Of a stretch of DNA of 64,000 bases, positions 24,106-51,734 are shown one piece after another. The stretch covers positions 4,340,001-4,404,000 of the forward strand of contig NC_043025.1 in the NCBI RefSeq assembly GCF_006345805.1. Reading direction: 5' to 3'. Source of the DNA: Octopus sinensis. Its lineage: Eukaryota. Each line of letters begins with the position of its first letter. The stretch's first letter is position 1. Under the pieces are notes generated by a model. It saw only the letters and a list, made by a program, of their open reading frames with translations, made no database searches and was not told where the DNA came from. The position numbers and the translations under genes are program-made.

Positions 24106-24479
24106 TAGTCTTTTTTTTGTGTGTGTGTAAAGTTGATGACAGTGTAGCTACTTAATTTCACAAGTTGAGGATCAGTGTTAAGGTGTTAATGGGGGGCCTG
24201 GGTAGGGTTAGATGGTGGGCAGAATTAATACTGGTCTTTGAATCAATTTTACTCAAATATAATAGGAAAAGAAAACCCCAACACATGGTGTGTTTAATAA
24301 TCCCTACTTGAAATCCAGCCCTTTTTTTATATGTATATAGATCGCCAGTCTTCATGCTATGTTTGTTTCTCCATAATGGAGACTTTGTAAATAAAATAAC
24401 AATAAACCCTTGAAAATGAACAAGTCTTGCCTCTTAATTGTTTTGTTTTTTCTCTTGTGTGTGTGGACAGTGCTGGTGG

Positions 24480-25082
24480 CACATGAAAGGCACCCGTGAT
24501 AGTGACGACCGTGAAAAAGGCACCCATGATAGTGACACCCATGTAAAAGCCAACCCTGATTGTGACACCCACGTAAAAGGCAACCATGATTGTGACACCC
24601 ACGTAAAAGGCAACCATGATTGTGACACCCACGTAAAAGGCAACCCTGATTGTGACACCCACGTAAAAGGCAACCCTGATTGTGACACCCACGTAAAAGG
24701 CAACCATGATTGTGACACCCACGTAAAAGGCAACCATGATTGTGACACCCACGTAAAAGGCAACCATGATTGTGACACCCACGTAAAAGGCAACCATGAT
24801 TGTGACACCCACGTAAAAGGTAACCATGATTGTGACACCCACGTAAAAGGTAACCATGATTGTGACACCCACGTAAAAGGTAACCATGATTGTGACACCC
24901 ACGTAAAAGGCAACCATGATTGTGACACCCACGTAAAAGGTAACCATGATTGTGACACCCACGTAAAAGGCAACCATGATTGTGACACCCACGTAAAAGG
25001 CAACCATGATTGTGACACCCATGTAAAAGGTAACCCTGATTGTGACACCCACGTAAAAGGTAACCATAATGTTGGCATATAG
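24480..25082. repeat. 30-bp minisatellite, about 17 near-perfect units plus degenerate edge units
   Basis: Unit GACACCCACGTAAAAGG(C/T)AACC(A/C)TGATTGT; explains the four overlapping ORFs at 24352-25170. Confidence 0.95.
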
Positions 25083-25794
25083 ATGGCTCCCGTGATGGTG
25101 ACGCATAGATTGTATCCATGATGATGACACAAAAATCACCTGTGCTAGCGACCTGTAAAAAAGGGTTCAAATTCCGATGAGGTCAACTTTGTTTTTCATC
25201 ACTTTCAGGGTCAATGAAATAAGTACCTATTTCTTTACTACCCACAAGGGGCTAAACACAGGACAAACAAGGACAGACAGACGGATTAAGTCGATTATAT
25301 ATCAACCCCAGTGCGTAACTGGTATTTATTTAATCGACCCCGAAAGGATGAAAGGCAAAGTTGACTTCGGCGGAATTTGAACTCAGAACGTAACGGCAGA
25401 CGAAATACGGCTACGCATTTCGCCCGGCGTGCTAACGATTCTGCCAGCTCGCCGCCTTGGGTATTGGGGTTGATGTGATTTACTAGCCCCTTTCCCTAAA
25501 ATTGCTGGCCTTGTGCCAAAATTTGAAACCTTTAGCAGCATTTCACCCATCTTCACATTGAGTTCAAATTCTGGCAAGGCAGACTTTGCCTTTCATCCTT
25601 TCAGGGTCAATAAATTAAGTACCAGTTATGTACTGGGGGTGATGTAATTGGCGTACTCTCTCCCCAGAAACTACTGGCCTTGTGACAAAACTTGAAATTA
25701 TTATTATTATTAAGACAATGTAATTGGCTAGTCCCCTCTCCCAAATTTCAGACCTTGTGCCTATAGTAGAAAGGATTATTATTATTATTATTAT

Positions 25795-26354
25795 TATTGA
25801 GTGAGAGAGCAGCGCATGCCATCAAAGTGACACTGGGGTAAAATATACGAAGCCCACTATACCCATCATAACTACCTGTCTGATAAGGTTACACCAGGCA
25901 CATGCATCACAACCATATGTGCACGACAGTGCTCTCATATAAAGATAAACAGCACATGACCTTGCAGGTGGGTCCCATTGAGAATTTTCTTCAATTTGAG
26001 TAACCCATCCCGCTCAAAAGGTCCCTGAACAAGGGTTGTTTAAGGATGTTGAACAAAACACCCATGTTTCCAGAGGTGAATTATTCAAACCCCAAAGAAT
26101 CCCTCTCAACACATGGCTATGATGCTCCCCCACTACTTCTGCTCGTGGTCAGAGATGCACATATCGTCAGCCACCAAGGGACATACTCAACTGGTTAAGG
26201 TCAAACAACTGACAAGCAAATCTGTGGTATTGAGCAGAATATTTGCTGTAGCCCATCTTTAATACCAAGACAAAACAATGTATATGATGACACTTCCAAT
26301 CAGCTAAGATCAGAAGCCATGAGAACCACTGCCTGGTACTGCATCAGGACATTT
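25795..26354 (-). mobile_element. Unclassified ~560-bp retroposon (family H) with an (AAT)n tail
   Basis: A second copy at 32066-32317 has the same ends and a ~330-bp internal deletion joined at the microhomology CACT. Confidence 0.65.
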
Positions 26355-26444
26355 GTCGGTTGGGCGAAATTTTGCCCCTTCGGGGTGAAATTGCTCTTTA
26401 TTACATTGAAATTGACATTTTTTATGCACACACACATTTACAAA

Positions 26445-28318
26445 ATGGCTTTAAAACGAGCTGCTGGCTCTTCCCTCCTTCTTGCAACACCCCCTCCACA
26501 AGAACAAAAGGCAACGTCGCGGGTTACGTACAACCCATTTCAAGCCGTAAAAGGCAACAAAGATCCTCCTTCCGAACCGGAGAGCACGCGCTCGGTTCAA
26601 AAGGAGAATGCAAGCCAGGACGTCGCGTTCGACGTCACTCTTGATTTCCCTCCTCTGCCTTCAACAAGTGATGCTGTACCGAAGAGGGAGGAAAAGAAAC
26701 TTATAACAGACAAAAATACAGACAAGAACCAACAAAAAAATGTTAAAAACTCTAACGATTTTGCTTCTGCTGCGAAGCAAATTTCGGAAGATGTAGAAAT
26801 AACGATGGAGGACATAAAGATGGCACAAGATTTGTTGAGAAAGGAGGGGAACAGTGTTTTCCTCAACACACCTCAACAACTCACACAAGAGACAAACAAA
26901 AGAACAATCTTTTATAAAGTCTTCGAAAAGAAAACTAAAAAATTGTTTAACGCCACACCACAACAGTTAGAGATGGCTCTGAAGCCCATTTGGGGCCAGA
27001 AGAGCTATGTGACAAGAGGGAAGCGATTTGGAACCGTGGAGGTTCGCTTCCCAACAGAGGAGCTTGCAAGGGCGAACGCCATTTCGCCCTTGCAAAATGA
27101 ACATTTGTTCCTCGTCCCGACATACCTCGGGCGTAAGGTACAAAAAATAACTATAAGCACAATACCCCCCGAACAGAAAATCTCATGGCTAGTGGCGGCT
27201 GTCCTCTATGGCATAGAGGACAATGCCACTATTCTGAATGTTCGGAGGGTACGAGAAAAGAACTGGTCAGGCATGGGTATTCAACTGCTGGTACAGATCC
27301 AGCAGGAAAACATCAATGCCATACCTGACTTTGTCATCTTGCTGGATGGGACAAGGCTAAATGTTATTGTAGAGGGGTGAAAGCCAAAATGTTTCCTCTG
27401 CAGTAGCGAAAGCCACCTAAAAAGGGACTGCCCCATTCAAAAAAGAGAATGGAGGAATATAGCAAGAGGCAGCAGCAGCAACAACAACAACAACAACAAC
27501 AACAACACAAGCAACAACAACAGAAACAACAAAAACAGCAAGAAACACCAAAGGATGCCACACCACCAACACCAGCACCAAGACGAGCAACACCACCTCC
27601 AACAACAACAACCACCACCAAACCAACACCGACAACCACCAGCAAACCAACACCGACACCAGTACCTCGAAGGTCGACAGCAGCGACATCAACAGTAACA
27701 GGAGCAGCGGCACCACCGATACCGGTGGAACCAGAAACTTTTCGTCCTGCTACTGAAGCAGACCCCTCAACCATTCCTTTGCCGGATGAAGAGATCTCGG
27801 ATTGTGCGAGCTCCGATTCCAACAAAGGAGAATGGAACATAGTACCTCCAAAAAAGAAAAAAGGAAAAAAACAAAAAGATTTACAGGGGAAGCACGAACA
27901 AATAGTACTTCCCAACATCAACAACAACATCAACAACAACACACACGCACAACAACAAACAACAACAACAACACTTTCGACACCACTACTGCCACTACCA
28001 CAGACACAAACAAACACAGACACAATTACAGACACGATTACAGCAGTGAATACAAGAAACCAGGAACTGGTTGAGTATTTGAAAAACAAAACAAGCACAA
28101 ACATTACAAATTTCATAATACCTACACACAACACACCACCAGCACACATTCTCACAATTAAAATAAACAAAACAGTTTACAACGAAATAAAACAAATATT
28201 CCCTAACGATGTGGGATCGTTAGGGAAAAGTTTCTCTCAGAAACTTTACAAAAATATTATTAAAGCACCCGTGCAAAAGCACAAGGGAGCCACCCCCACC
28301 ACCAACAACAGTAAGTAG
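26445..28318 (+). pseudogene. Tx1-like ORF1 (RRM-like region, CCHC zinc knuckle, polyQ/Thr-rich tail)
   Basis: Reading through the TGA at 27378-27380 gives KPKCFLCSSESHLKRDCP (CX2CX4HX4C, 27390-27431); a 1-nt frameshift then leads into ORF 27449..28318. Confidence 0.8.
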
Positions 28319-28357: not shown

Positions 28358-31300
28358 ATGGCAAATCTTAGAATCGGTTGCTTGAATGTGAGAGGCCTCG
28401 GGTCACCTTGGAAACAGGGTCACCTGTTAAACGACCTGAGGTTTCATGATGTGGATGTAGCAGCCATCAGTGAAACCAGGCTCTCCGACCCGCAGGAACT
28501 CGCACCCTTTTCGGCGGATACGAGATATTTCTATCTCCGTGTCGGCCGGGAGCGGGCGGTGGTGGTACTGTGGTGTTGTTTCGGAAGGGCCTGGACCTGA
28601 AAATAAGGACAGTCTTCTTGGATCCGGAAGGTAAGTTGGTGGTCCTCGACGTCGACGGTAGTGACGGCGGTGCTTTCAGACTGCTGGCTGCCTACGCTCC
28701 GACAGGAGCAGGGCAGTCGGATTATTTCAAACGTCTGGAAGTTTTCCTGGGAACGTCACGCACTCTAGTACTAGTTGGGGATTGGAACGCTGTCTTAGAC
28801 GAACGTTTCGATCGGGTGGGCAGGGGAGCGTCTGATAGGAGAGGGGGAGGGTGCAAGAGCCTCGCCAACCTACTCGGCCGCTTTCAGCTGTCCGACAGGT
28901 TTCGACTAGACAACCCGAATGTGCCAATGTGGACTTGGACAAACCGCATCGGGTCGTCTAGATCGTACTTAGATAGAGTGTTTTGTAGGCCAGCGGATAA
29001 GGACAGCGTAGGGTGTCCACAATTCCACCTAGTCGAATATACGGACCACAAATTAGTGATCTGTACGGTCGACTTAGATAGGCTACATAGACAGGGACCC
29101 GGCTACTGGAAGCTGAACGCGTCGTTAACGGCGTGCAAAGCTTACAGAGACTGGATTAGTTTACTAGTTAAGCGGGCGCTCACGGGGGCAATCATCAACA
29201 ACAACTGGTGGTTTGCCCTCAAGAGAGCAATTAGAGTAGAGTCGATTAGGTATAGTAAGACTCTAGCTATTGAACGTAGGAAGAGAGAGCGGGATTTAGT
29301 TAAGAAACTAGACGAGGCTCTTGACACTGGCATCGCGACCGACGTGTTGGCGGCAAGGTTGGCCCTCGACCAACACATCGACGCCAAACACGAAGGCTGC
29401 GTTGTCAGAGCTAAGGCACGTTCGCTAAGCGGGGAGGGGACTAGAGCCGCTCGATGGGCCCGCGTGGCGGAGGCGACGCGAGGCAACAGAGCAACCATTC
29501 GGTCTTTGGTGGACCAGAACGGGCGCGAGGTTACCCAACCGAAGCAGATGTGTACGGTGCTTCAGCGGCACTTTGCTCAACTGTTTGGGACGAGCGGTGG
29601 AACGGACACCAACGGTACAGACTTCGGTGTGTACCTGGATGGACTGCCGCAACTCTCGGACAACGAGGCAGAGTGCTGCGAAGGACCGATATCTGCCTGG
29701 GAAGTACAGGAAGCGATGAAGAGTTGCACGAGAGGTAGATCGCCGGGTTTGGATGGTCTGCCCTACGAGCTTTACTTTTCAATGCCAGACTTGTTTGCGG
29801 ACCTGTTGGCAAACGTCTACTGCAACTGGCAGCAAAACGGGAGAATTCCTGCTTTTGTCTGTCGAGGGGTGGTGGCTTTGCTAAAGAAGGACCCAAACAA
29901 GGGGGACGTTATAGGGAATTTCCGGCCCATCACTCTGCTCAATGCAGAGTTGAAGATTTTGGCCAAGGTGCTAGCCAAGAGATTGGCGCTTGTCGTGGAC
30001 AAGCTGGTCGGCGGGACGCAGACATGCGCCGTGCCGACCAGGTCGATACACGACAACCTCCATCTCATGCGCTACATCATAGAGAGGGTGGGTAACGACG
30101 CTGGCGCGGGTGGGGCTTTGATCAACTTGGATCAGAGTAAAGCCTTCGATACCTGGCAGCTGTCCTCAAGGCAGCCGGCTTCGGTCCAGTCTTCCGCGGG
30201 TGGATCGCTGCTTTATACAGCAACATCTGCTCGGTGATACGGGTGAACGGTCACCTTTCGGAACCGTTCGACATCTCGCGTTCGGTCCGCCAAGGATGCC
30301 CTCTCTCCTCCCTCTTGTACATTTTGACTCTCGAGCCATTACTGCGCAAGTTGGAGGCTTTGAGGGGCATCCCGCGCGATCTAGGAGGCGGAAACAGCGT
30401 GTCTGCTTATGCCGACGACGTCACCGTGGTGGTGTCGATCCACAGGCACATTGGCCTGATTGGCGAGACGCTAAACCAGTACGAAGCGGTGACAGGGGCA
30501 AAGATTAACGCGGAAAAGTCTGTGGGCTTGCAACTAGGCACCTGGAGAGGCAAGCCCATGCCGTCCAACAGCGTCGTAGGGCGCTAGACAGACGTACCCG
30601 TTAAACTGCTCGGGGTCTGGTTCGGTCCGGACCTCCAGGTGGATAAGAACTGGGAAGAGGTGACGAGCAGGGTGGCACGTCTCACCCAGAAATGGGCCGA
30701 GAGGAAGCTGTCCCTGAAAGGTCGAGCGGAGGTGGCGAATGCGTACATCGCATCCGTCATCTATTACCGCTTGACCGTCGTCCCTTGTCCCGACCGCTGT
30801 TGGCCAAGCTGGTACGCCTGCTCTTCGACTTTTTGTGGAAGGGTCAGGTGCCACTGGTCAGGCGATCCATCTGCTGTCAACGACCGCTGAACGGAGGCCT
30901 TGGAATGCCGTGGTTGCTGTTGCGCAGACATGCGCTCAGGCTGCGGCATCTCAAGCGCTTCCTAGACGGTGAACAGGTGTGGTCGTCTTTTGTCAGACGC
31001 GATTTTCCGCAGCTCGTCTCTTTGACGGAGCTGCAGACCTGGATCAAACGTAGACCGAGAAAGGGCGCTTGGCACCTCGAGTGCCGTCAAGCCCTCTCCG
31101 CCCTCCGCCAGGCGGGCAATGCGGTCGGTTACAGCTCCACTCTAGCGTTCTATAGAGGGTTAGTGGAGGAAAAATGCGACGACGTTCTCGGGGAAACTCT
31201 AGGCGTTGAAGACGACGAACTGAGCGGTCTGTTCGGGAGGACTTTCGGGCCGGGGCCGATGGATAATTTCCAGAGGTCTCTCGCCTGGCAGTGCTACCGA

Positions 31301-31773
31301 GGGGCTCTGCCTGTTCGAGATAAACTCTACCGGCACGGAAGTGCCGTCAGCCGGGCCTGCCCGAGGTGTTGCCAGGACGACGAAACCGTTCTGCACGCAG
31401 CGTCCAGTGCCCGAGTATTGCTGAAATATGGGTTTATGTCGAACAGCTACTGTCACGTGTAGGACGGATCCGACTATCGGCCGAATCCATAGTGAAGATT
31501 GCCCCGCCGACCTCCTTTAACAAGGAGGGCGAGGCCGTTTTCTTGTGCCTTGTGGCTGTGGCGAAAGAAGTCGTGTGGTGGACTCGTTTGAAAGGGCTAA
31601 AGTCAGACACTTTCCTCTTTGGTCAAGGCCTCATCAACTTTTTCAAGTTTCACTTGAAAAGGAAGATGAGGTTAGAGAGGAAAGTGCTGTCCGATAGCAA
31701 GTTTTATGAAAGGTGGGTGAATTGTGCGAGACTGGCCTGTATAAATGGACCAGTTCTCAGGTTTCGCCTGTGA
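28358..31773 (+). pseudogene. Tx1-like ORF2 (APE endonuclease, reverse transcriptase, zf-RVT)
   Basis: LNVRGL, SETRL, LVGDWN, SYLDRV, TDHK; SPGLDGLPYE, FRPITLLN, QSKAFD, VRQGCPLS, YADD (~30407); CPRC..DDETVLHA. Broken by frameshifts near 28510, 30150, 30795 and 31395 and by a TAG at 30585-30587. Confidence 0.92.
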
Positions 31774-32341
31774 TTTCAAAGAAAAAGGTAATGTAAAAGG
31801 AGAAGAAAGGGGACTCTCTACACCCCCTTTTTTTGACCAGGCTCCCGTTGGCTTTTGTAGGGTTTTTTCCACCGGGAACATTTCGAGACGTCTCCCCATT
31901 TTGGGAGTTTTTCATTGTTGAATTTTATAAGTTGTTATAAAGATTTTTACTCTGTGTTTTTAAAAAACGGCAAAACCCTTTGTAACCTTTCGTCCTGTCT
32001 TGTCCCTTTATGTAATCATGCGTGTTAGCCCTTGTGGCCAATAAAAAAGAATTGATTATTATTATTATTGAGTGAGAGAGCAGTGCATGCCATCAAAGTG
32101 ACACTACTTCTGCTCATGATCAGGGATGCACATATCGTCAGCCACTAAGGGACATTCTCAACTGGTTATGGTCAAACAACTGGCAAGCAAATCTGTGGTA
32201 TTGAGCAGAATATTTTCTGTAGCCCATCTTTTATACCAAGACAAGACAATGTACATGATAACACTTCCAATCAGTTCAGATCAGAAGCCACTGCCTGGTA
32301 CTGCATCAGGGCATTTATAATTATTATTATCATTATTATTA

Positions 32342-32375
<34 letters not shown>

Positions 32376-32608
32376 GGTGATGAGCTGGCAGAATTGTTAG
32401 CACATCAGACAAAATGCTTAGAGGCATTTCATCCGTCTTCATGTTTTGAGTTCAAATTCTGCCAAGGTAGACTTTCCCTTTCATCTTTGTGGAGTTGATA
32501 AATTAAGTACCAGTCAAGTACTGGGGTTGGTGTGATTGACTTAACCCCTTCCCCCAAAATTTCAGGCCTTGTGCCTACAGTAGAAAGGATTATTATTACT
32601 ATTATTAT

Positions 32609-32995
32609 GATTTATGTCGAACAGCTACTGTCGCGTATAGGACGGATCCGGCTATCAGCTGAATCCATAGTGAAGATTGCCCCACCGACCTCCTTTAACC
32701 GGGAGGGCAAGGCAGTTTTCCTTTGCCTAGTGGCTGTAGCAAAAGAGGTTGTATGGTGGACCCGTTTGAAAGGGCTAAGGTCAGACACTTTCCTCTTTGG
32801 CCCAGGCCTCATCAAGAGTAGAGAGAGAAGTGCTGTCAGATAGCAAGTTTGCTGAAAGGTGGATAAATGTCGCAAGAATGGCTAGTATGAAAGGAGCCAT
32901 TCTGAGGTTACACCTGTAATTTAAAAAGGTAATATAAAAGGAGAAAGGGGCTCTCTACCCCACTTTTGACCAGGCTCCCGTTGGCTTTTATGGGT
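32609..32995 (+). mobile_element. 5'-truncated Tx1 3' fragment related to the full-length copy
   Basis: YVEQLLSRIGRIRLSAESIVKIAPP...; internal deletion after ctcatcaa; begins directly after (ATT)n. Confidence 0.85.
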
Positions 32996-33135
32996 TTCAT
33001 CCTTGATTATGATCATCTAGACCCCTCCCCACAAATTCCAGACCTTGTGCCTTTAGTAGAAAAGATTACTATTATCTTGGAAATGAAAAACAATACAATT
33101 ATCATTATAACCATTTATTATTATCATGATCATTA

Positions 33136-33615
33136 TTAGTCCAAGTGCTGTGTTTCTTCAGGTATTTTGCTACAGATATAGGCTACAGGGACCTGCAGGC
33201 TTCCTCGAAGGCACTGTTTTCTATCAGATGAGGGAAGCCACAAAACTTTGACCTTGACGTTGACTGGTTGGCATGCGTAGTCCATTGGACATTGGCTGAG
33301 AGCACTCGCCCGGGCAAATACAAGACTGGACGGCACTCTCTCTGGATTGTAATCTAGGTGTAAAGTCCACAGACACAACGAGGAATTGGCCGATGGTGCG
33401 AGTATGTTGCTGAGACTCGTGTGGTCGACATCAAGGTGGTGGTGTCGGTGTCCATGATGATGATGATGATGGTGGTGGTGGTATTCTTCGCTGCTGAGCG
33501 TATGTTGAGCACTAATGAACGTTGTAGCAATAATTACTACAATAATAAATAGATGACTACAAAATTGGTGTGGATGTTGCAGATGATGACGATGACAAGG
33601 AAGAGAATTTAACAT
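33136..33615 (-). CDS. IL-17-like cystine-knot secreted protein, 159 aa, with a His-rich N-terminus
   Basis: Intact ORF beginning right after a strong acceptor (ttttttttcttctcctttcag|ATG); hydrophobic stretch LFIIVVIIATTFISA; IL-17 signature SLCLW..LDYNPERVPSSL..AR...SQC....ACQPV.V.V.VL...C....VPVAYIC; AATAAA about 17 nt after the stop. Confidence 0.72.
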   Translation of the reverse strand: MLNSLPCHRHHLQHPHQFCSHLFIIVVIIATTFISAQHTLSSEEYHHHHHHHHHGHRHHHLDVDHTSLSNILAPSANSSLCLWTLHLDYNPERVPSSLVFARASALSQCPMDYACQPVNVKVKVLWLPSSDRKQCLRGSLQVPVAYICSKIPEETQHLD

Positions 33616-33744
33616 CTGAAAGGAGAAGAAAAAAAATTTGAAAAAATAAGATCAAAATAAAATGAAACAATTAGTAATTAATTAGGATAATGAAATTGAA
33701 GACTATTGTTTATTTGCTTATGTTGTATTCCTGTTATATATAAT

Positions 33745-34205
33745 GCCAGCTTCGTCTGGTCCCCGTGCCGGTGGCACGTAAAAAGCACCATCCGATCATG
33801 GCCATTTGCCAGCCCCGTCTGGCACGTAAAAAGCACCATCCGATCATGGCCATTTGCCAGCCCCGTCTGGCCCCTGTGCCGGTGGCACGTAAAAAGCACC
33901 ATCCGATCATGGCCATTTGCCAGCCCCGTCTGGCACGTAAAAAGCACCATCCGATCATGGCCATTTGCCAGCCCCATCTGGCACCTGTGCCGGTGGCACG
34001 TAAAAAGCACCATTCGATCGTGGCCGTTTGCCAGACTCGTCTGGCACCTGTGCCGGTGGCACGTAAAAAGCACCCAATACACTCACGGAGTGGTTGGCGT
34101 TAGGAAGGGCATCCAGCTGTAGAAACGCTGCCGGATCAGACTGGAGCCTGGTGCAGCCTTCTGGCTTCCCAGACCCCATTTGAACTGTCCAACCCATGCC
34201 AGCGA
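33745..34205 (+). mobile_element. SINE family D with an internal tandem array (42/56-bp units)
   Basis: Repeated ggcacgtaaaaagcaccatccgatcatggccatttgccagc followed by the ttggcgttaggaagggcatccagc core. Confidence 0.75.
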
Positions 34206-34599
34206 GCAGCAATTTTAGGGGAGGGAATGAGTTCATTAAATTGACCCTCCTGTGTGCAACTGGTACTTATTTTATTGAACCCTAAAGAATGAAAAGTAAA
34301 GTCAACCTTGGTGGAATTTGAACTCAGAACATCATGTCAGACAAAATACCTATTTCTTTATTACCCACAAGGGCTAAACACAGAGGGGACAAACAAGGAC
34401 AGACAGACGGATTAAGTCGATTATATCGATCCCAGTGCGTAACTGGTACTTATTTAATCGACCCCGAAAGGATGAAAGGCAAAGTTGACTTCGGCAGAAT
34501 TTGAACTCAGAATGCAGCAGCTGAACAAGAGTCTTTTTTGTGCATGGCGCAAAGGATTGTCCAGTAGCTAACCTGCCTAGGCCAAACACAAAGAAGGAA

Positions 34600-35990
34600 C
34601 CCTGCCCACCACTATGCAAGACCACCACAGTCAACAGACACAGGATGGCCTTCCCTAACGCCTGCACAGTCATCACCCCAATACTTTTACTAAATATTGG
34701 GGGCCTGTTGCATCAAAATAAAACAAAATTTCTTTCCTGGGAGATCTTACTGCATGCAGTCAAGCCTTATGTATAGCACTCGTGGAAACTCACCTCAGCC
34801 CTGATATAGAGGACGCAGAAGTACACGTACCAAACTATGCCATACTGCGAACAGACAGAAGGGAAAGGAGCCATGGTGGAGTTGCTGTATACATCCGTGA
34901 TGACCTCACACCCCAGGTCTTACTGACATACTCAAATTCGGTATGTGACACTTTAATTGTATACATAAGACAACATAATATAGTCATATGCAATACGTAT
35001 TGCCCACCGGATGCGCCAAATCACATAGGCAAGTTTGAAGATTGCCTCACAAGAATGAAAGAAATCCTCATGAATCTGGAACACCACGTGACCATATTTC
35101 TTATGGGTGATTTCAACTTCCCCAACGTCAAATGGCCCGAAGGTCTCATACTCTCAGGAATGAATCATTGCAAGCAAGTACAGGTGGAGTCCCTGCTCAA
35201 CCTCACCAATGCCTTATTCATGGAGCAAGTTGTACTCAAACCAACTAGGGTGAATAACACTCTGGATCTCTGCTTCACGAACAATATAGACATCATTCAT
35301 GATGTGAAAGTGACACCGACATTAGTCTTGGATCACAACATAATAGAGCTGTCTATGTTTGGGCCGAAAGTAACCAGAGACATACAGCCTAAAGGAAGCA
35401 CCCGAAATCTCTCCAATCAGAACTTCCACAAAGCAGATTGGAAATCGATCCAAAAAGAGATCCTCAGAGAGGACTGGCCGAAATGTCTCTCCACACCAGA
35501 CATTGACATGAAACTAGAATGTTTCATGTCTTCTGTGCAAGCTGTATGCCAGAAATATGTCCCAGAGCACAAGGCTAAAACAAATAGGAGCAAGATTCCA
35601 AGAGACATGAAGATCCTCATGAGACGACGGACGAAGGTTGCAAATCGACTCAACCAACATCCCAAAAGTAGCGAAACGTCCCGCCTAAAAACAACACTGA
35701 TGGAGATCGAAAAAAGGCTGCAACAATCCTATGTGAGGGAGAAAGCAGACAAAGAAGCTTGGGTTATAAAAAAACATTAAATCAAACCCAAAGGCCTTCT
35801 TTCATTACGCGAAAGAAACAGTCTCAGTACACTACAAGATAGGACCCCTCCTCCAAAAGGATGGCTCCCTCACAGACAGTCCAACTAAGATCAGTGAGAT
35901 ACTGAATGACCAGTTCAAAAGTGTCTTTACCACCCCGTTGGAACACAGACAAGTGAACGAACCAGTGGACTTCTTTGCTGCCTCACCTAT
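34600..35990 (+). mobile_element. CR1/Jockey-group LINE fragment: APE endonuclease and linker, 3' part missing
   Basis: LLLNIGGL, ALVETHL, RTDR..RSHGGVAVY, YCPPD, MGDFNFPNVKW, PTRVNNTLDLCFTN, LDHNII, then IKSNPKAFFHY after single-base frameshifts at ~34775 and ~35770. Confidence 0.85.
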
Positions 35991-36130: not shown

Positions 36131-37369
36131 CAGGCTTCCACACAGTTTCCATCTACCAAATCCACTCCCAAAGCTTTGATTGGCCCAGACACTTGCCCAA
36201 GGTGCCACGCAGTGGGATTGAACACAAAGCCAAATGGTTGCAAAGCAATTTTCTTAACTATACATTCACATCTGTACCTCTTTATATCTTTTACATGTTT
36301 TAGTCTGTGGCCATGCTGGGGCACCACCTTGAAGACTGTTTAGTCAAACGAATTGACTTCAGTACACATTTCTTTTTCAAACCTGGTATTTATTCTGTTA
36401 GTCTCTTTTGCTAAACTGCTAAGTTACGGAGATATAAACACACCGACACCGGTTGTCAAACAGTGGCGAGGGACAAACACTGACACACACACACACACGA
36501 TGGGCTTCTATCAGTTTCCGTCTGCAAAATCCACCCAAAAGGCTTTGGTTGACCTGATGCTATGGAAGAAGGCACTTGCCCAAGGTGCTACACAGTGGGA
36601 TTGAACCTAGAACCATGTGGTTGGGAAGCACACTTCATACCACAGAGCCTGTACCTATACATACACAAAAATACATTGACATACATTAACATATATTAAC
36701 ATACATTAACATATAGAAATCTAATTTCTTACCTTGAGATATTTCTGAGAAGTGCTGTGTTGTCTTATGCAATAAATAAATATATATATATATATGTATA
36801 GATGTTTCTGCTGAGATAAATAGTTATATGATATTATTTATGATTATTATGCATATAATATTATATGGTTCTGCTGAGATGAATATTAGTTATATAATAT
36901 TATTTGTAATTGTTATAATCTATAATATTATATGTTTCTGTTGAAGAGAATCACAACTGGCCTGCAATTCTGTTGAGTTGTTCTTGTCGTATGAAAGGTA
37001 TTTTTCTTGAATGAATGAATGCTGTAGCCTTCATATATATATATACATCTGTAGCAGGGCTAGTGTAAGAGTGGGTATTCTAGTTCCTATTGCATGGCAA
37101 AGTCATGACACTTAAATCTCATTTGTCAATCCTGGTAAAAATCCAATAATCTTATTTTTCATTCACAAAATTTCCATGTTGTTTATCTGTGTGTTCCTGT
37201 TTCCCGATTCCGTGTGTTAAAGCGTGGCTTTGATAAAAATACAGTTCAATAAAAATAGATAAAAGCACACACACACACACACATAAACCCAACAGCAAAC
37301 AAACATTTTCTGTACATATCAGTATGTATATGATTAAGTGTATATCTATATATATATCTAGATATATAT

Positions 37370-37568
37370 ATATCAACCTATTAGTCTATCTATCTGTGTA
37401 TCTATCTATCTGTGTATCTATCTATCTATGTGTCTGTCTGTCTGTCTGTCTGTCCATCCGTCCATCCATCTATCCATCTTTCTATCTATCTATCTATCTA
37501 TCTATCTGTCTGTCTGTGTGTCTGTCTGTCTGTCCGTCCGTCCATCCATCCATCCATCCATCCATCCT

Positions 37569-37635
<67 letters not shown>

Positions 37636-37639
37636 GTTA

Positions 37640-37683
<44 letters not shown>

Positions 37684-37718
37684 GTGTATCTATCTATCTA
37701 TCTATCTATCTATCTGTG

Positions 37719-37767
<49 letters not shown>

Positions 37768-38158
37768 GTCCCTCTATCTATCTATCCAACCATCTCTCTC
37801 TCTCTCTATCTATCTATCTCTCTATCTATCTATCTATCTATCCATCTATCTTTCTACCTATCTATCTATCTATACTTATTTGCAAATAAATGTGTTATCA
37901 CGTGACATTATTGACTGAGGTTACCGTGGTCTTTTCCGTAGGCTTTTCTTTCCATGGATAAACCTTATCTGCTTCCCCCTTTACACCATGACATTTCTGT
38001 GATACACGATCCCTATTGATCGCTTTTTTTTCCCCCTTTCCTTTTTACGATCCCTTTTGATCGAAAACCTACCCCGCTTTTTTTTTCCCCAAAAAGAAAA
38101 GCTCTACTTTGCAATTTGTCCCATCTGTGTTCAGCCCTGTTTGGCTAATAAAGAAACA

Positions 38159-38224
<66 letters not shown>

Positions 38225-38292
38225 CTATCCATCCATCTATATCTATCTATTTATCTATCTATCTATCCTTCCATCCATCCATCCATCCATCC

Positions 38293-38331
<39 letters not shown>

Positions 38332-38373
38332 CATCTATCCATCCATCCATCCATCCATCCATCCATCCATCCA

Positions 38374-38453
<80 letters not shown>

Positions 38454-38463
38454 CATCCATCCA

Positions 38464-38495
<32 letters not shown>

Positions 38496-38575
38496 CATCC
38501 ATCCATCCATCTATATCTATCTATCCATCCATCCATCCATCCATCCATCCATCTCTATCTATCTATCCATCCATC

Positions 38576-38625
<50 letters not shown>

Positions 38626-39468
38626 AGCCGAGTCTATCGTTAATATCGTCACGCCTCCTTCCTTCAAACGGGAAGGAAGAGCTATTTTTATCATACTTGT
38701 GGCTATGGCGAAAGAATGTATCTGGTGGACGCGTCTGAAAGGATTAGAGACAAACACTTTCCTCTCTGGTCAATCTCTCATCAACTTCTTCAAGTATCAC
38801 TTGAAGAAAAAAGTGAGAGTAGAGAGGCAAGTTTTGTCTAGTGAATGTTTTAAAAAAAGATGGGTGAATGTAGCAAGGATGGCACGTATGAATGACGAAG
38901 CCACCTTGACTATGATTCTATGAACCGTAAAAATTAATACAGAGAGTTGCTTATTTGCAAAAAAAAAAAAAAGAAATATAACATGTGACTTCATTGACCG
39001 AGGTTACCGTGGTCTTTTCCGTAGGCTTTTCTTTCCACGAGTAAACCTCACCTGTCCTCCCCTTTACACTTCATATTGGCATTTCTGTGATAACGATCCC
39101 TATTGATCAATTTTTTTTCCTCTCCCCCTTTTTTTTTTAACCCCCCCCCTTTTTTGTCCTCTTTCTCTCCTTTTACGATCCCTTTTGATCGTTCCCCCCT
39201 TTTTTATTTTATTTTATTTGTTATTTTATTATTTTTTTTTTAAACCTTCAAAAGAAAAGCTCTACCTTGTAATTTGTTCTATCTGTGTGCAGCCCTGTGT
39301 GGCTAATAAAGAAACATATCTATCTATCTATCTATCTATCTATCCATCTATCTATATCTATCTATCTTTCTATCCATCCATCCATCTATATCTATCTATC
39401 TATCTATCTATCTTTCTATCCATCCATCTATATCTATCTATCTATCTTTCTATCAATCCATCCATCTA

Positions 39469-42885: not shown

Positions 42886-43102
42886 AGAATCAATCGCGGT
42901 TTCAAAATCCACGGTTTCCCTAATCGAAATTTCACAACCAAAACGGTTTGTCACACCAGTTGAATCCGAGTGCTCTCCCTTACATATAAGCTTGCTTCTA
43001 CTAAAACTAGTTAAAGTGTTGAATGCCTCAAACCAGTTTATCACTCCGGAATATTGAGAAACCTCAGTTGCTACACAGCTAATGCCCTGTCTTATCTATA
43101 CG

Positions 43103-43772
43103 GGATCTTTTCGGTTTGACCGGCAGTTTTTTTAAATAATTTCCACGCAACTAAACACTTTTAAACTTCGTATACTGGTAGAATGTGTTTATAAAATATC
43201 TTTTTCTCTTGGCTTTATTGAGAAAATTCTATAGTTTGTAAGATATTTGTTGTTATTTTTTCTTTAATTTCTGCAATTTCAACCAATCACTGACGTCTAT
43301 TGAGGTAAAAAATATATTCTGTGCCGTATGAATATGTCCCTCGTTTAAGAAACAGGGATCTTTTCTGTTTGAACGGCAGTTTTTAAAAATAATTTCCACG
43401 TAACTAAAGACTTTTAGACTTCGTATACTGGTAGAATGTGTTTATAAAACATCTTTTTCTCTTGGCTTTATTGAGAAAATTCTACAGTTTGTAAGATATT
43501 TGTTGGGTTTTTTTCTTCAATTTCTGCAATTTCAACCAATCAATGACGTCTTTTGAGGTAAAAAAACATTCTGTGCCGTATGAATATGTCCCTCGTTTAA
43601 GAAACAGATTGGGTTTATTTACATTTGTGAAGAAAAAAAAGATATCCTTCCCCCTAACCCTAGCCCTAAAACAGATTGAAATGCAATAGATCGATTCTAG
43701 GGTCATAATAATGGGTGACGATTTCATATATGACACCGCTAGAAAAAACTACCGGTCAAACCGAAAAGATCC
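43103..43772. mobile_element. Family G MITE with a two-unit structure
   Basis: Internal restart at 43356 with the same AAGAAACAG|GGATCTTTT junction as 10006-11425; no TSD recognisable. Confidence 0.8.
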
Positions 43773-44155: not shown

Positions 44156-46464
44156 TCTCTCTCTATATAAAGGTGAAGTTGTCTGTGTGTGGCAGGTTTG
44201 GTAGCCTTCAACTAACACTATCCCCTCCAAGACCAAAAGGTTAATATAGGGCGTAACAAATATCAGAAAATCAAAAAAAAAATGTGTGTAATAGGTGTAA
44301 AACAACTTCCTATGAACGAATATGAAAAAAAAAATTCGCGCACGCGAAAGGGGGGTGGGGGAGATGCCTCGGAAAATTCACATCGGGAAGTTCCGAAAGC
44401 GTCTGAGGAGCTGACCCGGGCACCAAAACAAAAAAAAAATAGTGTAATATGTGTAAAACAACTTGCTCTAAACGAATATGACAAAAAAAAATGCGCTCTC
44501 GCGAAAGAGGGGTGGGGGAGAGGCCTCGGAATATTTATATCGGGAATTTCCGAAAGCGTCTGAACCGGGCACAAAAACAAAAACAAAAACAGCGAAATAG
44601 TGTAAAACAACTTGCTCTAAACGACTATCATGAAAAAAATGCGCGCTCGCGAAAGGGGGGTGGGGGAGAGGCTTCGGAAATTTCACATCTTCAGTCCACG
44701 GCCTTTAAACTAAGAAAAAATAGTGTAATTGGTGTAAACTACTTGTTCTAAACGAGTATCAAGAACACACACTCACACATGAATCATAAACTCCGTATTT
44801 CGCAAAAAAAAAAAATAAAGAGAAGAAATTCTGGAAAAAGTGAAGAAATGTTGGATCTCCGCCATGTGAATCAAAATACGTGTCAGAAACATCTTGAAAT
44901 ACTACAGAAATTATGTTACGAAAATGATAATGTATACATACCTCTTTGAGTGGTCCATCGATAATGATGATAAAGAAATAAGTTGGATTTGAACTCAGAA
45001 TATTGACTAACACAACTACATACTACAAGACTCAAAATATTCAGCCAAGTCACCACCCTTTAACTAGCAATAATAATAACATCAATAACATAACAGCCAA
45101 AAGATTTATTTGTTCTGAAAATAACAATCATAGTAAATAAATATGTTCTTTAATATTCACATTCATGTGCACAGTTAAACACACTTACATACAAACAGTC
45201 ACGCATGCATAATACAAAACGGAACACATAAATGAAGGATGCATTACTTAGTATATATTACATCTAGAGAATTTTGATTAATAAGTCAAATATGCAAATT
45301 ATAAAGATAATTAATTGCTTTACTAAACAGTGTTGTAAAGGTGAAAAAATAAATTGGGAAAAAAATACACGCCAAAACTAATTAATAAAGGATAATTAGG
45401 GAAGGATTGACACAAAATAATAATTTTTTCTGTCTCTTTTTTTCTGATAAATGCATCTTAATAAGTGAGAAGAATTGCATGTATCTGAACTATTCAAAGA
45501 AAAGCATAAATTTAATGTTTAAAATAGCTTTAACCAAGGAATGAGATCCAACATTTCTTCACTTTTTCCAGAATTTCTTCTCTTTATTTTTTTTTTTGCG
45601 AAATACGGAGTTTATGATTCATGTGTGAGTGTGTGTTCTTGATACTCGTTTAGAACAAGTAGTTTTACACCAATTACACTATTTTTTCTTAGTTTAAAGG
45701 CCGTGGACTGAAGATGTGAAATTTCCGAAGCCTCTCCCCCACCACCCTTTCGCGAGCGCGCATTTTTTTCATGATAGTCGTTTAGAGCAAGTTGTTTTAC
45801 ACCTATTACGCTGTTTTTGTTTTTGTTTTTGTGCCCGGTTCAGACGCTTTCGGAAATTCCCGATATAAATATTCCGAGGCCTCTCCCCCACCCCTCTTTC
45901 GCGAGAGCGCATTTTTTTTTGTCATATTCGTTTAGAGCAAGTTGTTTTACACATATTACACTATTTTTTTTTTGTTTTGGTGCCCGGGTCAGCTCCTCAG
46001 ACGCTTTCGGAACTTCCCGATGTGAATTTTCCGAGGCCTCTCCCCCACCCCCCTTTCGCGTGCGCGAATTTTTTTTTTCATATTCGTTCATAGGAAGTTG
46101 TTTTACACCTATTACACACATTTTTTTTTTGATTTTCTGATATTTGTTACGCCCTATATTAACCGACCAAAATTGAGAGTATGATAGAAGAAGGCTTGCT
46201 CTTCCTTCTGTAGAAGAAAAAAATTCAAATTGGACCATGTTAACACCAAAAATTATTTACATCAAAAAGGTGCTTTTTTTCTATGAAAATCCCTATTTTT
46301 TACGATTTTTTGACAACTGTGTCACCATTTTTCGGTGTATTTCAACCAGAAAAATGTTCACTTAAAGAGAATAACAAGCTACATAATGCAAACTTTTTAC
46401 GTTTAAAAAATTCCAGTTTTAAAGGGTCGAAAGAAACCTGAGCAATGCCGGGCGATACTGCAGG
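44156..46464 (+). mobile_element. Helitron-like element hosting the foldback insertion
   Basis: A|TCTCTCTCTATATAAAGG start resembles the 40310 element; the 3' end cctgagcaatgccgggcgatactg-CAGG|T is a variant of the CTAG end. Confidence 0.6.
44239..46164. mobile_element. 1.9-kb foldback DNA transposon with ~620-bp TIRs (Merlin-like)
   Basis: Left TIR 44239-44859 and right TIR 45543-46164 are nearly perfect; termini GGTTAATATAGGGCG; 8-bp TSD GACCAAAA; ~156-bp subrepeats inside each TIR; non-coding AT-rich core. Confidence 0.88.
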
Positions 46465-48608: not shown

Positions 48609-49487
48609 TTTAACCCTTTAGCGTTCAGATTACTCTGTTAAATGTAATAACTTTTCACTCAAATTGTTTGGAATTAATCCTGCATTATCTCATAGCTTTT
48701 GAGATTTCAATGATGTGATTGTTTATTTTAAGAATGACATTGTAGGGTAGGTGTGAGAGGCTGGATCTGGCCTTGTTTTCAATTAATCATGCATTATCTC
48801 ATAGCTTTTGAGATTTCAATGATGTGATTGTTTATTTTTAGAATGACATTGTAGGGTAGGTGTGAGAGGCTGGATCTGGCCTTGTTTTGAATTAATCATG
48901 CATTATCTCATAGGTTTGAGATTTCAATGATGTGATTGTTTATTTTAAGAATGACATTGTAGGGTAGGTGTGAGAGGCTGGATCTGGCCTTGTTTTGAAT
49001 TAATCCTGCATTATCTCATAGGTTTGAGATTTCAATGATGTGATTGTTTATTTTTAGAATGACATTGTAGGGTAGGTGTGAGAGGCAGGATCTGGCCTTG
49101 TTTTCAATTAATCATGCATTATCTCATAGGTTTGAGATTTCAATGATGTGATTGTTTATTTTTAGAATGACATTGTAGGGTAGGTGTGAGAGGCTGGATC
49201 TGGCCTTGTTTTGAATTAAACATGCATTATCTCATAGCTTTGAGATTTCAAAGATGTGATTGATTATTTTTAGAATGACATTGTAGGGTAGGTGTGAGAG
49301 GCTGGATCTGGCCTTGCTTTGAATTAATCATGCATTATCTCATAGCTTTGAGATTTCAATGATGTGATTGTTTATTTTTAGAATGACATTGTAGGGTAGG
49401 TGTGAGAGGCTAGATATCGCCAGTTTGAATATGAAACATGTAGAATATATTGGGCTGGATTTGGCCGGTTTAAACACTAAAGGGTTA
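48609..49487. mobile_element. Family F piggyBac-like MITE with seven internal ~108-bp tandem units
   Basis: TTAACCCTTTAGCG start and CTAAAGGGTTAA end; the unit restarts at ~48672, 48781, 48890, 48998, 49106, 49214 and 49322. Confidence 0.85.

Positions 49488-51498: not shown

Positions 51499-51530
<32 letters not shown>

Positions 51531-51688: not shown

Positions 51689-51734
<46 letters not shown>

What the first reader, a model, noticed from the sequence alone, without database searches (positions are those of the whole stretch)
33136..33615. Intact IL-17-like cytokine gene hidden among retrotransposons, with a poly-His N-terminus
Seen: a 159-aa ORF whose ATG follows a strong polypyrimidine-CAG acceptor, and only phase 0 is open. 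It has a signal-peptide-like stretch (HLFIIVVIIATTFISA), EEY-H9-GHRHHH, then SLCLWTLHLDYNPERVPSSLVFAR...C...ACQPVNVKVKVL...C...VPVAYIC, and AATAAA follows the stop. Established: W..x.D.(D/N)P.R.P..L..A, C.PV and a terminal C.C are IL-17 family hallmarks, and octopus genomes have an expanded IL-17-like family. Inference: a lineage-specific secreted IL-17-like protein whose His-rich extension could bind metal or sense pH. It sits alone here, not in a visible cluster.
Basis: partly seen in the sequence, partly recalled or inferred. Interest (0 to 1): 0.75.

Follow-up and report, generated by a model that had tools for sequence, protein, structure and literature searches.

The report
Divergent lone IL-17-like gene, octopod genome
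A 159-codon open reading frame on the minus strand really does encode a distant relative of the IL-17 cytokine family, a family already known to be expanded in octopuses, but it has lost one of the family's two hallmark disulfide bonds, its poly-histidine run is an ordinary microsatellite, and nothing available here shows whether it is expressed.

Summary
The ORF is real: 33136-33615, minus strand, 159 aa, ATG directly after a T-rich tract plus CAG, other two frames closed. Homology to IL-17 is real but indirect. Pfam IL17 scores only 16-17.5 bits (cutoff 24). An exhaustive search of 1.84 billion proteins finds two IL-17-domain proteins as the only true hits (E 4.7e-6 and 1.3e-4). A profile built from three relatives without the ORF scores it at 62 bits end to end. 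An alignment-guided AlphaFold model matches only IL-17A/F/IL-25 structures.

Restoring that pair in silico lifts Pfam to 28.5 bits. Expressed mussel IL-17s have a similar two-bridge pattern, so this does not prove decay.

The (CAY)9 His run is one of four such microsatellites in the window. The gene sits on a 668-bp unique island between LINE, SINE-like and tandem repeats, with no second copy in 64 kb. No identical or close protein, orthologue or transcript was found.

Verdict: a new, divergent member of a known expanded family; function about even odds; modest interest.

The parts
33616..33636 (-). Polypyrimidine tract plus CAG (CAG = 33618-33616), a 3' splice-acceptor-like site abutting the ATG
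   Evidence: Read directly. 21 comparable sites on both strands of the window, and only this one is followed by ATG. The contig of relative P0003 also shows tttacag about 15 nt before its ATG. Use as an acceptor is inferred, not shown.
33136..33615 (-). 159-codon ORF (ATG 33615-33613, TAA 33138-33136) encoding the IL-17-like pre-protein
   Evidence: The other two frames have 5 and 7 stops.
33508..33615 (-). Residues 1-36: His-rich n-region (MLNSLPCHRHHLQHPHQFCSH) followed by hydrophobic core LFIIVVIIATTFISA. Putative signal peptide with a possible I-S-A|Q cleavage site
   Evidence: Hydropathy up to 2.8. AT-rich, low-GC3 codons (GC3 0.28 for codons 1-60 against 0.52 for the domain). No signal-peptide predictor was available.
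33436..33480 (-). His-rich linker H9-G-H-R-H3 (residues 46-60); the perfect (CAY)9 run is 33454-33480
   Evidence: One of four (CAY) runs of at least 6 units in the window. The full-ORF PDB matches were all His-tag artefacts.
33166..33387 (-). IL-17 domain, residues 77-150. Cys81, Cys109, Cys115, Cys135 and Cys148 are retained. Ala103, Ala105/Leu106 and Tyr146 stand where all three relatives have Cys
   Evidence: Pfam IL17 16.1-17.5 bits, profile positions 1-57 of 81. HMM of three relatives: 62.2 bits, positions 3-76 of 78. phmmer E 4.7e-6 to P0001. Alignments. Model strands at domain residues 23-29, 37-43, 53-66 and 76-90. Foldseek top 50 all IL-17 family.
33114..33119 (-). AATAAA, 17 nt after the stop codon
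   Evidence: It lies within an AT-rich microsatellite-like stretch (family D3), so it is weak evidence for a poly(A) signal.
33076..33743 (.). The only segment around the ORF with no other copy in the window (668 bp: ORF plus 60 bp 3' and 128 bp 5')
   Evidence: Self-blastn.
33744..34203 (.). Tandem repeat (111/48/63-nt units) immediately upstream of the gene, with related copies near 4.5-4.9 kb, 14.2 kb and 56.8 kb
32611..32997 (+). 5'-truncated duplicate of the LINE 3' end (78% identical to 31433-31865), about 140 bp beyond the gene's stop codon
28570..31462 (+). Degenerate LINE (endonuclease, reverse transcriptase, zf-RVT), split into two ORFs
   Evidence: Pfam. 76% nt identity over 2.9 kb to an intact copy in GCA_024449705.1. 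Best named protein hits are cephalopod.
34782..35780 (+). Second LINE endonuclease fragment
   Evidence: Pfam Exo_endo_phos_2, 39.2 bits.
34222..34524 (.). SINE-like element copies of a high-copy family (another copy at 32382-32601 in opposite orientation)
   Evidence: More than 15 copies in the window, including an array at 53.9-55.3 kb.

Best explanation
This is a single-coding-exon, lineage-specific paralogue of the expanded IL-17-like family in an octopod genome. The frame is intact. As translated, it gives three parts:

1. A signal-peptide-like N-terminus (residues 1-36).
2. A disordered His-rich linker, created by slippage of a CAY trinucleotide repeat (residues about 37-76).
3. A complete four-strand IL-17 domain (residues 77-150).

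The domain has lost both partners of one canonical beta2-beta4 knot disulfide (Ala103 and Tyr146). It keeps the other beta2-beta4 bridge (Cys109-Cys148, inferred). It also keeps the invertebrate-type beta1-beta3 bridge (Cys81-Cys115, inferred). Cys135 probably has no intrachain partner.

If expressed, it would most likely be secreted and act as a dimeric IL-17-type ligand in epithelial or mucosal defence, like its relatives. The free Cys135 lies at the loop position that I recall (not verified here) as making the interchain bond in human IL-17A/F.

Shown: the ORF, the homology, the cysteine pattern, the repeat context. Inferred: secretion, disulfide pairing, dimerisation, receptor signalling, use of the acceptor.

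I put IL-17 homology at about 0.95. I put 'currently functional, expressed gene' at about 0.5.
For: - Homology: exhaustive phmmer E 4.7e-6 and 1.3e-4 to P0001 and P0003 in 1.84e9 proteins. Both are Pfam IL17 above cutoff, at 60.4 and 28.3 bits.
- A Pinctada 'Interleukin 17-like protein' is recovered by the profile.
- The profile matches solved IL-17A/F chains at E about 6e-6 over 81 positions.
- An HMM built without the ORF scores it at 62.2 bits over positions 3-76 of 78.
- The alignment-guided AF2 model has pLDDT 77, with the core at 81-94. The top 50 Foldseek matches are all IL-17 family.
- Non-cysteine core motifs are kept: W, NP.R.P, L..A, C.PV, VL, VPV.
- Putting Cys back at only A103 and Y146 raises Pfam from 17.5 to 28.5 bits and extends the match to 1-79 of 81. 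The weak score therefore reflects one lost disulfide pair, not general decay.
- Precedent: expressed, Vibrio-responsive mussel IL-17-3 has one beta1-beta3 plus one beta2-beta4 bridge, a pattern the paper reports for other mollusc IL-17s too (PMC10055819). Vertebrate IL-17s fold with two of three knot bridges. Sea-urchin subfamilies 3 and 9 lack the C-terminal cysteines.
- Gene-like layout: ATG, hydrophobic segment, linker, domain, then a stop 11 residues after the last Cys, as in P0003.
Against: - The direct Pfam score is below the gathering cutoff.
- Two of the four family-defining knot cysteines are absent, and the mature protein would have an odd number of cysteines (5).
- The exact protein is not in a 15-billion-protein collection, is on no recorded contig, and has no relative above about 38% identity.
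- The gene sits on a 668-bp unique island in dense repeats, with no identifiable promoter or upstream exon.
- The N-terminal 60 codons are AT-rich, low-complexity DNA (GC3 0.28) that might be open by chance.
- The fold model depends on an alignment made of IL-17s. The single-sequence control was uninformative.
Confidence: 0.6

Rival explanations
1. It is a non-functional relic: a dispersed duplicate of an IL-17-like gene that is decaying under relaxed constraint. Its frame happens still to be open, and it is stranded among later TE insertions.
For: - Three of eight conserved cysteines are lost, and Cys135 is left unpaired.
- Pfam is below cutoff.
- It is isolated from any cluster, whereas expanded IL-17 families typically sit in tandem arrays.
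- Only 668 bp of unique DNA remains.
- No identical or similar protein is on record.
- 5 of 35 sea-urchin IL-17 loci are reported as either pseudogenes or assembly-truncated.
- Cys to Tyr at 146 is a single TGT to TAT transition.
Against: - There is no stop or frameshift in 160 codons, although the Cys-to-Ala changes need 2-3 substitutions each, which implies long divergence.
- Both partners of one disulfide are lost rather than one. This is weak evidence: about 43% of random three-cysteine losses would include a full pair (my calculation).
- All non-cysteine core motifs and the full domain length are retained.
- Functional mussel IL-17s show a comparable cysteine pattern.
Confidence: 0.3
2. 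The IL-17 domain is a real exon, but the N-terminal 60 or so residues are not as translated. Either the acceptor at 33616 joins an upstream coding exon carrying the true start and signal peptide, or the true exon starts further in and the His/Ile-rich stretch is low-complexity intron sequence that is open by chance.
For: - There is a strong acceptor-like site exactly at the ATG.
- A two-exon structure is the most common in mussel IL-17 genes, and missing signal peptides are often annotation artefacts.
- The ORF of relative P0001 lacks a signal peptide and has a cctttgtag acceptor-like site about 150 nt upstream of the called ATG.
- Codons 1-60 differ in composition from the domain and look like CAT, ATT and CAY repeats.
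- The 21-residue n-region is unusually long for a signal peptide.
Against: - No convincing acceptor lies between the His tract and the domain (reading).
- Under the open-by-chance variant, ATG, hydrophobic core, small residues at -3/-1 and 60 open codons in an AT-rich sequence would together be an unlikely coincidence: roughly 2% for the open frame alone (my estimate).
- P0003 has the same layout, with signal peptide, long linker and domain in one ORF and an acceptor-like site just before the ATG.
Confidence: 0.12
3. The copy arose by LINE-mediated retroposition of an IL-17-like mRNA (a retrocopy), which would explain its solitary position among LINE fragments and its single coding exon.
For: - It is a lone copy flanked by LINE fragments.
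- The coding region is uninterrupted, while many mollusc IL-17 genes have two or more exons.
Against: - There is no poly(A) remnant after AATAAA and no target-site duplication.
- The pyrimidine-CAG abutting the ATG looks like retained intron sequence, which a processed copy would lack.
- The flanking LINE and SINE pieces belong to high-copy families spread across the window, so adjacency is expected by chance.
Confidence: 0.08
4. It is a chance ORF in repeat-rich DNA with spurious motif resemblance to IL-17.
For: - 26 ORFs of this size exist in the window, mostly in repeats.
- The direct Pfam E-value is only 0.015.
Against: - E 4.7e-6 in a 1.84e9-protein library to a protein with a 60-bit IL17 domain.
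- 62 bits against an independent profile, with no other window segment above 7.3 bits.
- All of the top 50 structure matches are IL-17 family.
Confidence: 0.01

Closest known systems
Bivalve-type invertebrate IL-17 domain proteins (P0001 from an ENA metagenome contig; P0006, Pinctada imbricata 'Interleukin 17-like protein'; P0003 from Logan runs SRR26493826/8/9)
   Same: 35-38% identity in pairwise BLASTP with P0001 and P0006 over 82-88 residues. Shared features: C-[PLY]-W, NP.R.P, L..A, C.P[VI], VL and VPV..C; the same four-strand layout; the domain at the C-terminus, with the stop a few residues after the last Cys.
   Different: All three have eight aligned cysteines; the ORF has five. F-A-R-C-R-C becomes F-A-R-A-S-A, and G-C-I-C becomes A-Y-I-C. 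None has a His-rich linker. Their contigs share no repeats with this window, so they are not shown to be cephalopod.
Mussel McIL-17-3 and related Mytilus IL-17s (PMC10055819)
   Same: Only two knot bridges, one beta1-beta3 and one beta2-beta4, with canonical cysteine sites substituted. These genes are expressed and respond to Vibrio challenge, which shows that such a pattern is compatible with function.
   Different: The mussel proteins are reported to have lost sites 2 and 6 (Thr, and Q/R/V). The ORF has lost sites 2 and 5 (Ala and Tyr). No direct sequence comparison was made here.
Human IL-17A / IL-17F / IL-25 (solved structures)
   Same: Same fold by the alignment-guided model (TM 0.5-0.6, top 50 hits). 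Profile match over 81 positions. They fold with two of the three classical knot disulfides.
   Different: Vertebrates lack the beta1-beta3 bridge (Ser/Ser) and keep both beta2-beta4 bridges. The ORF keeps the beta1-beta3 bridge and one beta2-beta4 bridge. Identity is about 20%. Vertebrate IL-17s have no poly-His.
Octopus IL-17-like expansion (31 genes in Albertin et al. 2015; 36 genes in 23 clusters in Saco et al. 2021; also O. minor)
   Same: Probable taxon and family. Reported as a lineage-specific, fast-diverging repertoire, with 27 of 31 genes strongly expressed in suckers and skin.
   Different: Expanded repertoires are typically in tandem arrays, whereas this copy is alone in 64 kb. No octopus IL-17 sequence could be retrieved here, so relatedness to annotated members is untested.
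Sea-urchin SpIL17 subfamilies 3 and 9
   Same: Members of an expanded invertebrate IL-17 family that lack canonical C-terminal knot cysteines.
   Different: They lack both C-terminal cysteines and may be truncated predictions. The ORF lacks one of the two and is full length.

Membership tests
IL-17 (Pfam PF06083) | Score at or above the curated gathering threshold (24 bits) against the IL17 profile | tested here: not met
   16.1 bits for the full ORF and 17.5 bits for the domain alone, covering profile positions 1-57 of 81. Restoring two Cys in silico gives 28.5 bits over 1-79 of 81.
IL-17 (Pfam PF06083) | Significant sequence homology to accepted family members | tested here: met
   phmmer E 4.7e-6 and 1.3e-4 in 1.84e9 proteins to two proteins that pass the Pfam IL17 cutoff. 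62.2 bits against an HMM of three relatives built without the ORF. Caveat: the relatives were chosen because they matched the ORF.
IL-17 (Pfam PF06083) | Four conserved cysteines forming two beta2-beta4 disulfides of the knot | tested here: not met
   Only two of the four are present (Cys109, Cys148). The other two positions are Ala103 and Tyr146.
Invertebrate-type IL-17 | Extra cysteine pair at the vertebrate Ser/Ser positions (CPW motif and C.P[VI]), 6-8 cysteines in the domain | tested here: inconclusive
   C-L-W (Cys81) and C-Q-P-V (Cys115) are present, so the pair is met. The domain has only 5 cysteines, below the 6-8 range. Two mussel isoforms with 4 conserved cysteines are on record.
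IL-17 fold | Two long antiparallel beta-hairpins (strands 1-2 and 3-4) superposable on solved IL-17 structures | tested here: met
   AF2 with a four-sequence alignment: pLDDT 77, four strands. Foldseek top 50 all IL-17A/F/IL-25, best E 7.9e-4, TM 0.5-0.6. This is not independent of the alignment: the single-sequence model (pLDDT 61.7) found no IL-17.
Secreted cytokine | Cleavable N-terminal signal peptide | tested here: inconclusive
   A hydrophobic core at residues 22-36 and I-S-A at positions -3 to -1 are present. The n-region is 21 residues long and the DNA is low-complexity. No SignalP-type tool was available.
IL-17 cytokine (functional) | Dimer that binds an IL-17 receptor and signals through SEFIR/Act1-TRAF6 | not testable with these tools
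   Needs protein biochemistry and the species' receptor genes.
Octopus IL-17-like expansion | Orthology or paralogy to annotated octopus IL-17-like genes; tandem-cluster location; sucker or skin expression | tested here: inconclusive
   No second copy within 64 kb. No cephalopod IL-17 sequences or RNA-seq were reachable. An octopod origin is supported only by LINE relatives.

The most novel reading that the evidence does not exclude
The ORF is an expressed, octopod-specific IL-17-fold ligand with a rewired disulfide framework (one beta1-beta3 bridge, one beta2-beta4 bridge, and a free Cys135 for covalent dimerisation). Its microsatellite-born poly-His pro-region has been co-opted, for example for Zn/Cu/Ni binding or pH-dependent retention in mucus or sucker cuticle. 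That would make it a cytokine-derived protein with a new mode of localisation or activation.
Probability: 0.08. Interest if true: 0.55.

Novelty: new member of a known kind. Interest (0 to 1): 0.3.

Why it matters
IL-17 is one of the few cytokine families shared by vertebrates and invertebrates, and its large, fast-evolving octopus repertoire is poorly characterised. If this locus is expressed, it adds an apparently unrecorded, highly divergent member and a second molluscan example of an IL-17 fold that has dispensed with a canonical knot disulfide. That bears on how much of the 'defining' cysteine framework the fold really needs.

It also shows that domain-threshold annotation (Pfam cutoff) would miss such members, so published gene counts for the expansion may be underestimates.

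If it is a relic, it is an ordinary by-product of birth-and-death evolution in a TE-rich genome.

Tried and rejected
1. Full-ORF search of PDB sequences: every hit was a His-tagged construct, so it was discarded as artefact. The domain alone gave no hit.
2. Word-indexed homologue search with the ORF: none at E <= 0.01. With a three-sequence profile it returned only P0001 and P0006.
3. Three of the five exhaustive-search hits (P0002, P0004, P0005) are repetitive translations with no IL17 domain, and were rejected.
4. Exact-sequence look-ups of the ORF in the 15-billion-protein collection and in the contig index: absent.
5. Scan of JGI metagenome contigs for close relatives, tried because one such contig holds octopod-like LINE DNA: none found.
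6. Single-sequence AlphaFold control: low confidence and no IL-17 matches, so uninformative.
7. Second copy or cluster in the window: none by tblastn or by HMM on all 1631 stop-to-stop segments.
8. Composite-element or cargo idea, prompted by the inverted ~100-nt repeats flanking the ORF: rejected, because the arms belong to a family with more than 15 copies in the window.
9. Rfam and tRNA scans of the flanks: nothing.
10. Other large ORFs in the window: only LINE domains or low-complexity artefacts, with no host gene found whose intron might hold the ORF.
11. Albertin 2015 and Hymowitz 2001 are not held in the library. The IL-17F residue pairing (Cys72-Cys122, Cys77-Cys124, interchain Cys17-Cys107) and the equivalent IL-17A interchain bond (Cys10-Cys106) are therefore from my memory.
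12. Species identity was not resolved. I could not name the organism of assembly GCA_024449705.1.
Full report
**1. What is in the sequence**

The ORF exists at 33136-33615 but on the minus strand. It runs ATG (33615-33613) to TAA (33138-33136) and encodes 159 aa. The other two frames of that strand carry 5 and 7 stops.

The ATG directly follows ttttttttcttctcctttCAG. Only 21 sites this pyrimidine-rich occur on the two strands of the window, and this is the only one followed by ATG.

The translation has three parts:
- Residues 1-36: a His-rich n-region and a hydrophobic core, LFIIVVIIATTFISA (Kyte-Doolittle mean up to 2.8).
- Residues 37-76: a linker containing EEY-H9-G-H-R-H3.
- Residues 77-150: the conserved domain. 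The stop comes 11 residues after the last cysteine.

AATAAA lies 17 nt after the stop, but inside an AT-rich TAA/TGA stretch, so it says little.

An ORF of this length is not remarkable here. There are 26 ATG ORFs of at least 159 aa in the window against 0.28 in shuffles, and nearly all the others lie in TEs or simple repeats. The case rests on homology.

**2. Is it IL-17?**

Directly, only weakly. Pfam IL17 gives 16.1 bits (E 0.015) for the ORF and 17.5 bits for the domain alone. The cutoff is 24, and the match covers only profile positions 1-57 of 81. PDB sequence hits with the full ORF are all His-tag artefacts, and the domain alone finds nothing.

Indirectly, the evidence is strong:
- An exhaustive phmmer search of residues 61-159 against 1.84 billion representatives returned five hits. 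Three are repetitive junk. The other two, P0001 (E 4.7e-6, 38% identity) and P0003 (E 1.3e-4), are Pfam IL17 proteins above cutoff, at 60.4 and 28.3 bits.
- A profile search added a Pinctada imbricata 'Interleukin 17-like protein', P0006.
- The profile of the ORF plus two relatives matches solved human IL-17A/F chains end to end at E about 6e-6.
- An HMM built from the three relatives without the ORF scores the ORF at 62.2 bits over positions 3-76 of 78. No other of the 1631 stop-to-stop segments in the window exceeds 7.3 bits.
- An AlphaFold model guided by the four-sequence alignment has pLDDT 77, with the core at 81-94, and four long strands. Its top 50 Foldseek matches in the PDB are all IL-17A, IL-17F or IL-25, with TM 0.5-0.6.

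Two caveats apply. The relatives were selected because they hit the ORF. The model also leans on an alignment made of IL-17s: a single-sequence control was low-confidence (pLDDT 61.7) and found no IL-17. So the structural evidence does not add independently to the sequence evidence.

**3.

All three relatives share eight aligned cysteines. The ORF has five of them:
- F-A-R-C-R-C-S-R-C in the relatives is F-A-R-A-S-A-L-S-Q-C here.
- V-P-V-G-C-I-C is V-P-V-A-Y-I-C.

In the usual six-site numbering of the knot, the ORF keeps site 1 (Cys81, C-L-W for CPW), site 3 (Cys109), site 4 (Cys115, C-Q-P-V) and site 6 (Cys148). It has lost site 2 (Ala103) and site 5 (Tyr146).

The family is characterised by four conserved cysteines that make two beta2-beta4 bridges, and invertebrates add a pair where vertebrates have two serines. 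By my recollection of the IL-17F structure, which I could not retrieve, sites 2 and 5 pair with each other and sites 3 and 6 pair with each other. On that pairing, the ORF has lost exactly one whole bridge and keeps the other, plus the invertebrate beta1-beta3 bridge.

A diagnostic supports this placement. Putting Cys back at only A103 and Y146 lifts Pfam from 17.5 to 28.5 bits and extends the match to positions 1-79 of 81.

The eighth-cysteine pair is half lost. Ala105 (or Leu106) stands in for one partner, which leaves Cys135 in the beta3-beta4 loop probably unpaired. The alignment in that loop depends on the method.

**4. Does this mean a pseudogene?**

Not necessarily.
- Expressed, Vibrio-responsive mussel IL-17-3 has one beta1-beta3 and one beta2-beta4 bridge with canonical sites substituted, a pattern the paper reports for other mollusc IL-17s too (PMC10055819).
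- Two mussel isoforms have only four conserved cysteines.
- Sea-urchin subfamilies 3 and 9 lack the C-terminal pair.
- Vertebrate IL-17s themselves fold with two of three bridges.
- The Cys-to-Ala changes need two to three nucleotide substitutions each (GCG and GCT against TGY). That implies long divergence, yet the frame has no stop or frameshift and all non-cysteine motifs are kept.

Points against function:
- The paired loss is not statistically telling. About 43% of random three-of-eight losses include a full pair (my calculation).
- The mature protein would carry an odd cysteine.
- The protein and anything close to it are absent from a 15-billion-protein collection that does include eukaryotic runs and some mollusc proteomes.
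- A scan of metagenome contigs found no close relative.

I cannot tell whether octopus proteomes are in those collections, so this absence is weak evidence.

**5. The poly-His**

The nine-His run is a perfect (CAY)9 repeat at 33454-33480. Three other (CAY) runs of at least 6 units lie in non-coding parts of the same 64 kb, along with 13 perfect trinucleotide microsatellites of at least 6 units.

Codons 1-60 are compositionally unlike the domain (GC3 0.28 against 0.52) and read like degenerate CAT, ATT and CAY repeats. The simplest account is replication slippage in a tolerant, disordered linker. Metal binding or pH sensing is possible but has no support here. No His-rich IL-17 turned up in the literature search.

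**6. Context**

- The neighbouring ORFs are LINE pieces: endonuclease plus RT plus zf-RVT at 28570-31462, and endonuclease at 34782-35780.
- The best named relatives of that LINE are from Argonauta hians (55%) and Acanthosepion pharaonis. It is 76% identical in DNA over 2.9 kb to an intact copy in assembly GCA_024449705.1. This supports a cephalopod, probably octopod, origin. The species stays unknown.
- Self-comparison shows that 59% of the window has another copy within the window.
- The only unique DNA around the ORF is 33076-33743, which is 668 bp.
- Immediately upstream is a 111/48-nt tandem repeat (33744-34203), followed by SINE-like copies (34222-34524).
- Downstream are a repeat fragment, a 5'-truncated LINE 3' end (32611-32997) and another SINE-like copy.
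- No promoter, upstream exon, poly(A) remnant or target-site duplication can be identified, and no host gene was found whose intron might contain the ORF.
- The flanking inverted repeats belong to a family with more than 15 copies, so they do not define a mobile unit.

**7. Mechanism and odds**

Most likely this is a lineage-specific, divergent IL-17-like paralogue with a single coding exon. If expressed, I infer that:
- it is secreted after cleavage near I-S-A|Q;
- it carries a floppy His-rich N-terminal region;
- it folds into the IL-17 hairpin pair held by Cys81-Cys115 and Cys109-Cys148;
- it dimerises as its relatives do, possibly covalently through Cys135, which aligns with the loop cysteine that I recall (not verified here) as forming the interchain bond in human IL-17A/F.

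My estimates:
- IL-17 homology: about 0.95.
- Functional gene: about 0.5.
- Open-frame relic: about 0.3.
- N-terminus differently spliced: about 0.12.
- Retrocopy origin: about 0.08. This concerns origin rather than present status, so it overlaps with the estimates above.

**8. Comparison and novelty**

The family, its expansion in octopods and its reported sucker and skin expression are already known. This locus is a new, apparently unrecorded member with an unusual but not unprecedented cysteine pattern and a microsatellite-derived His tract.

Strict membership criteria are not met: the Pfam cutoff and the four-cysteine motif both fail. I therefore file it as a divergent IL-17-fold homologue rather than a canonical IL-17.

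Interest is modest. It would rise if the orthologue and transcript tests in the next-steps field come out positive.

Noticed in passing
window 28570-31462 (+), with L005 (GCA_024449705.1 contig JAANSU011340864.1): The LINE next to the gene is split into two ORFs (28570-30237 and 30692-31462). A 76%-identical copy in another assembly has an intact 912-aa RT ORF. Upstream ORFs at 26319-27380 and 27449-28318 have no Pfam match and may be the element's ORF1 region.
   Followed up: partly
window 31433-31865, 32611-32997, 38621-38894: Three copies of the same LINE 3' end (72-78% identical). Two are 5'-truncated, as expected of abortive LINE insertions. One ends about 140 bp from the IL-17-like stop codon.
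   Followed up: partly
window 53927-55290; also 19.4-20.5 kb, 23.0-25.7 kb, 32382-32601, 34222-34524, 41.1-41.3 kb, 60.7-61.3 kb: A SINE-like element of about 170-185 nt is present in more than 15 copies, including a head-to-tail array of about 7.5 units. It contains a GGAATTTGAACTCAGAA motif. No tRNA or Rfam match was found in the parts scanned.
   Followed up: partly
window 33744-34203, related copies at 4498-4941, 14172-14376, 56754-57041: A tandem repeat with nested 48-, 63- and 111-nt periods lies directly upstream of the ORF. It is open in several frames and produces spurious 76-138-aa ORFs on both strands.
   Followed up: partly
window 1914-3260, 10006-11254, 43102-43607, 48664-49415: Large satellite-like arrays (227-, 252- and 108-nt units, 90-96% matches). 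The 252-nt unit recurs at two places 32 kb apart.
   Followed up: no
window 44267-44689 and 45713-46136: Two 157-nt-period arrays whose consensus units look like reverse complements of each other, about 1 kb apart. This could be the inverted ends of a larger element.
   Followed up: no
window 24352-25170, 37343-38625, 51362-52861, 59205-59871: ORFs open in nearly all frames correspond to a 30-nt minisatellite, (TATC)n and (TA)n-like tracts. The Pfam 'PMG' hit at 24352-25170 is a low-complexity artefact.
   Followed up: yes
L001 560-760; L002 1130-1260: The two closest IL-17 relatives also have acceptor-like pyrimidine-AG sites shortly upstream of their called start codons. P0001 lacks a signal peptide in its ORF, which suggests an upstream exon. 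Their source organisms are unknown.
   Followed up: partly
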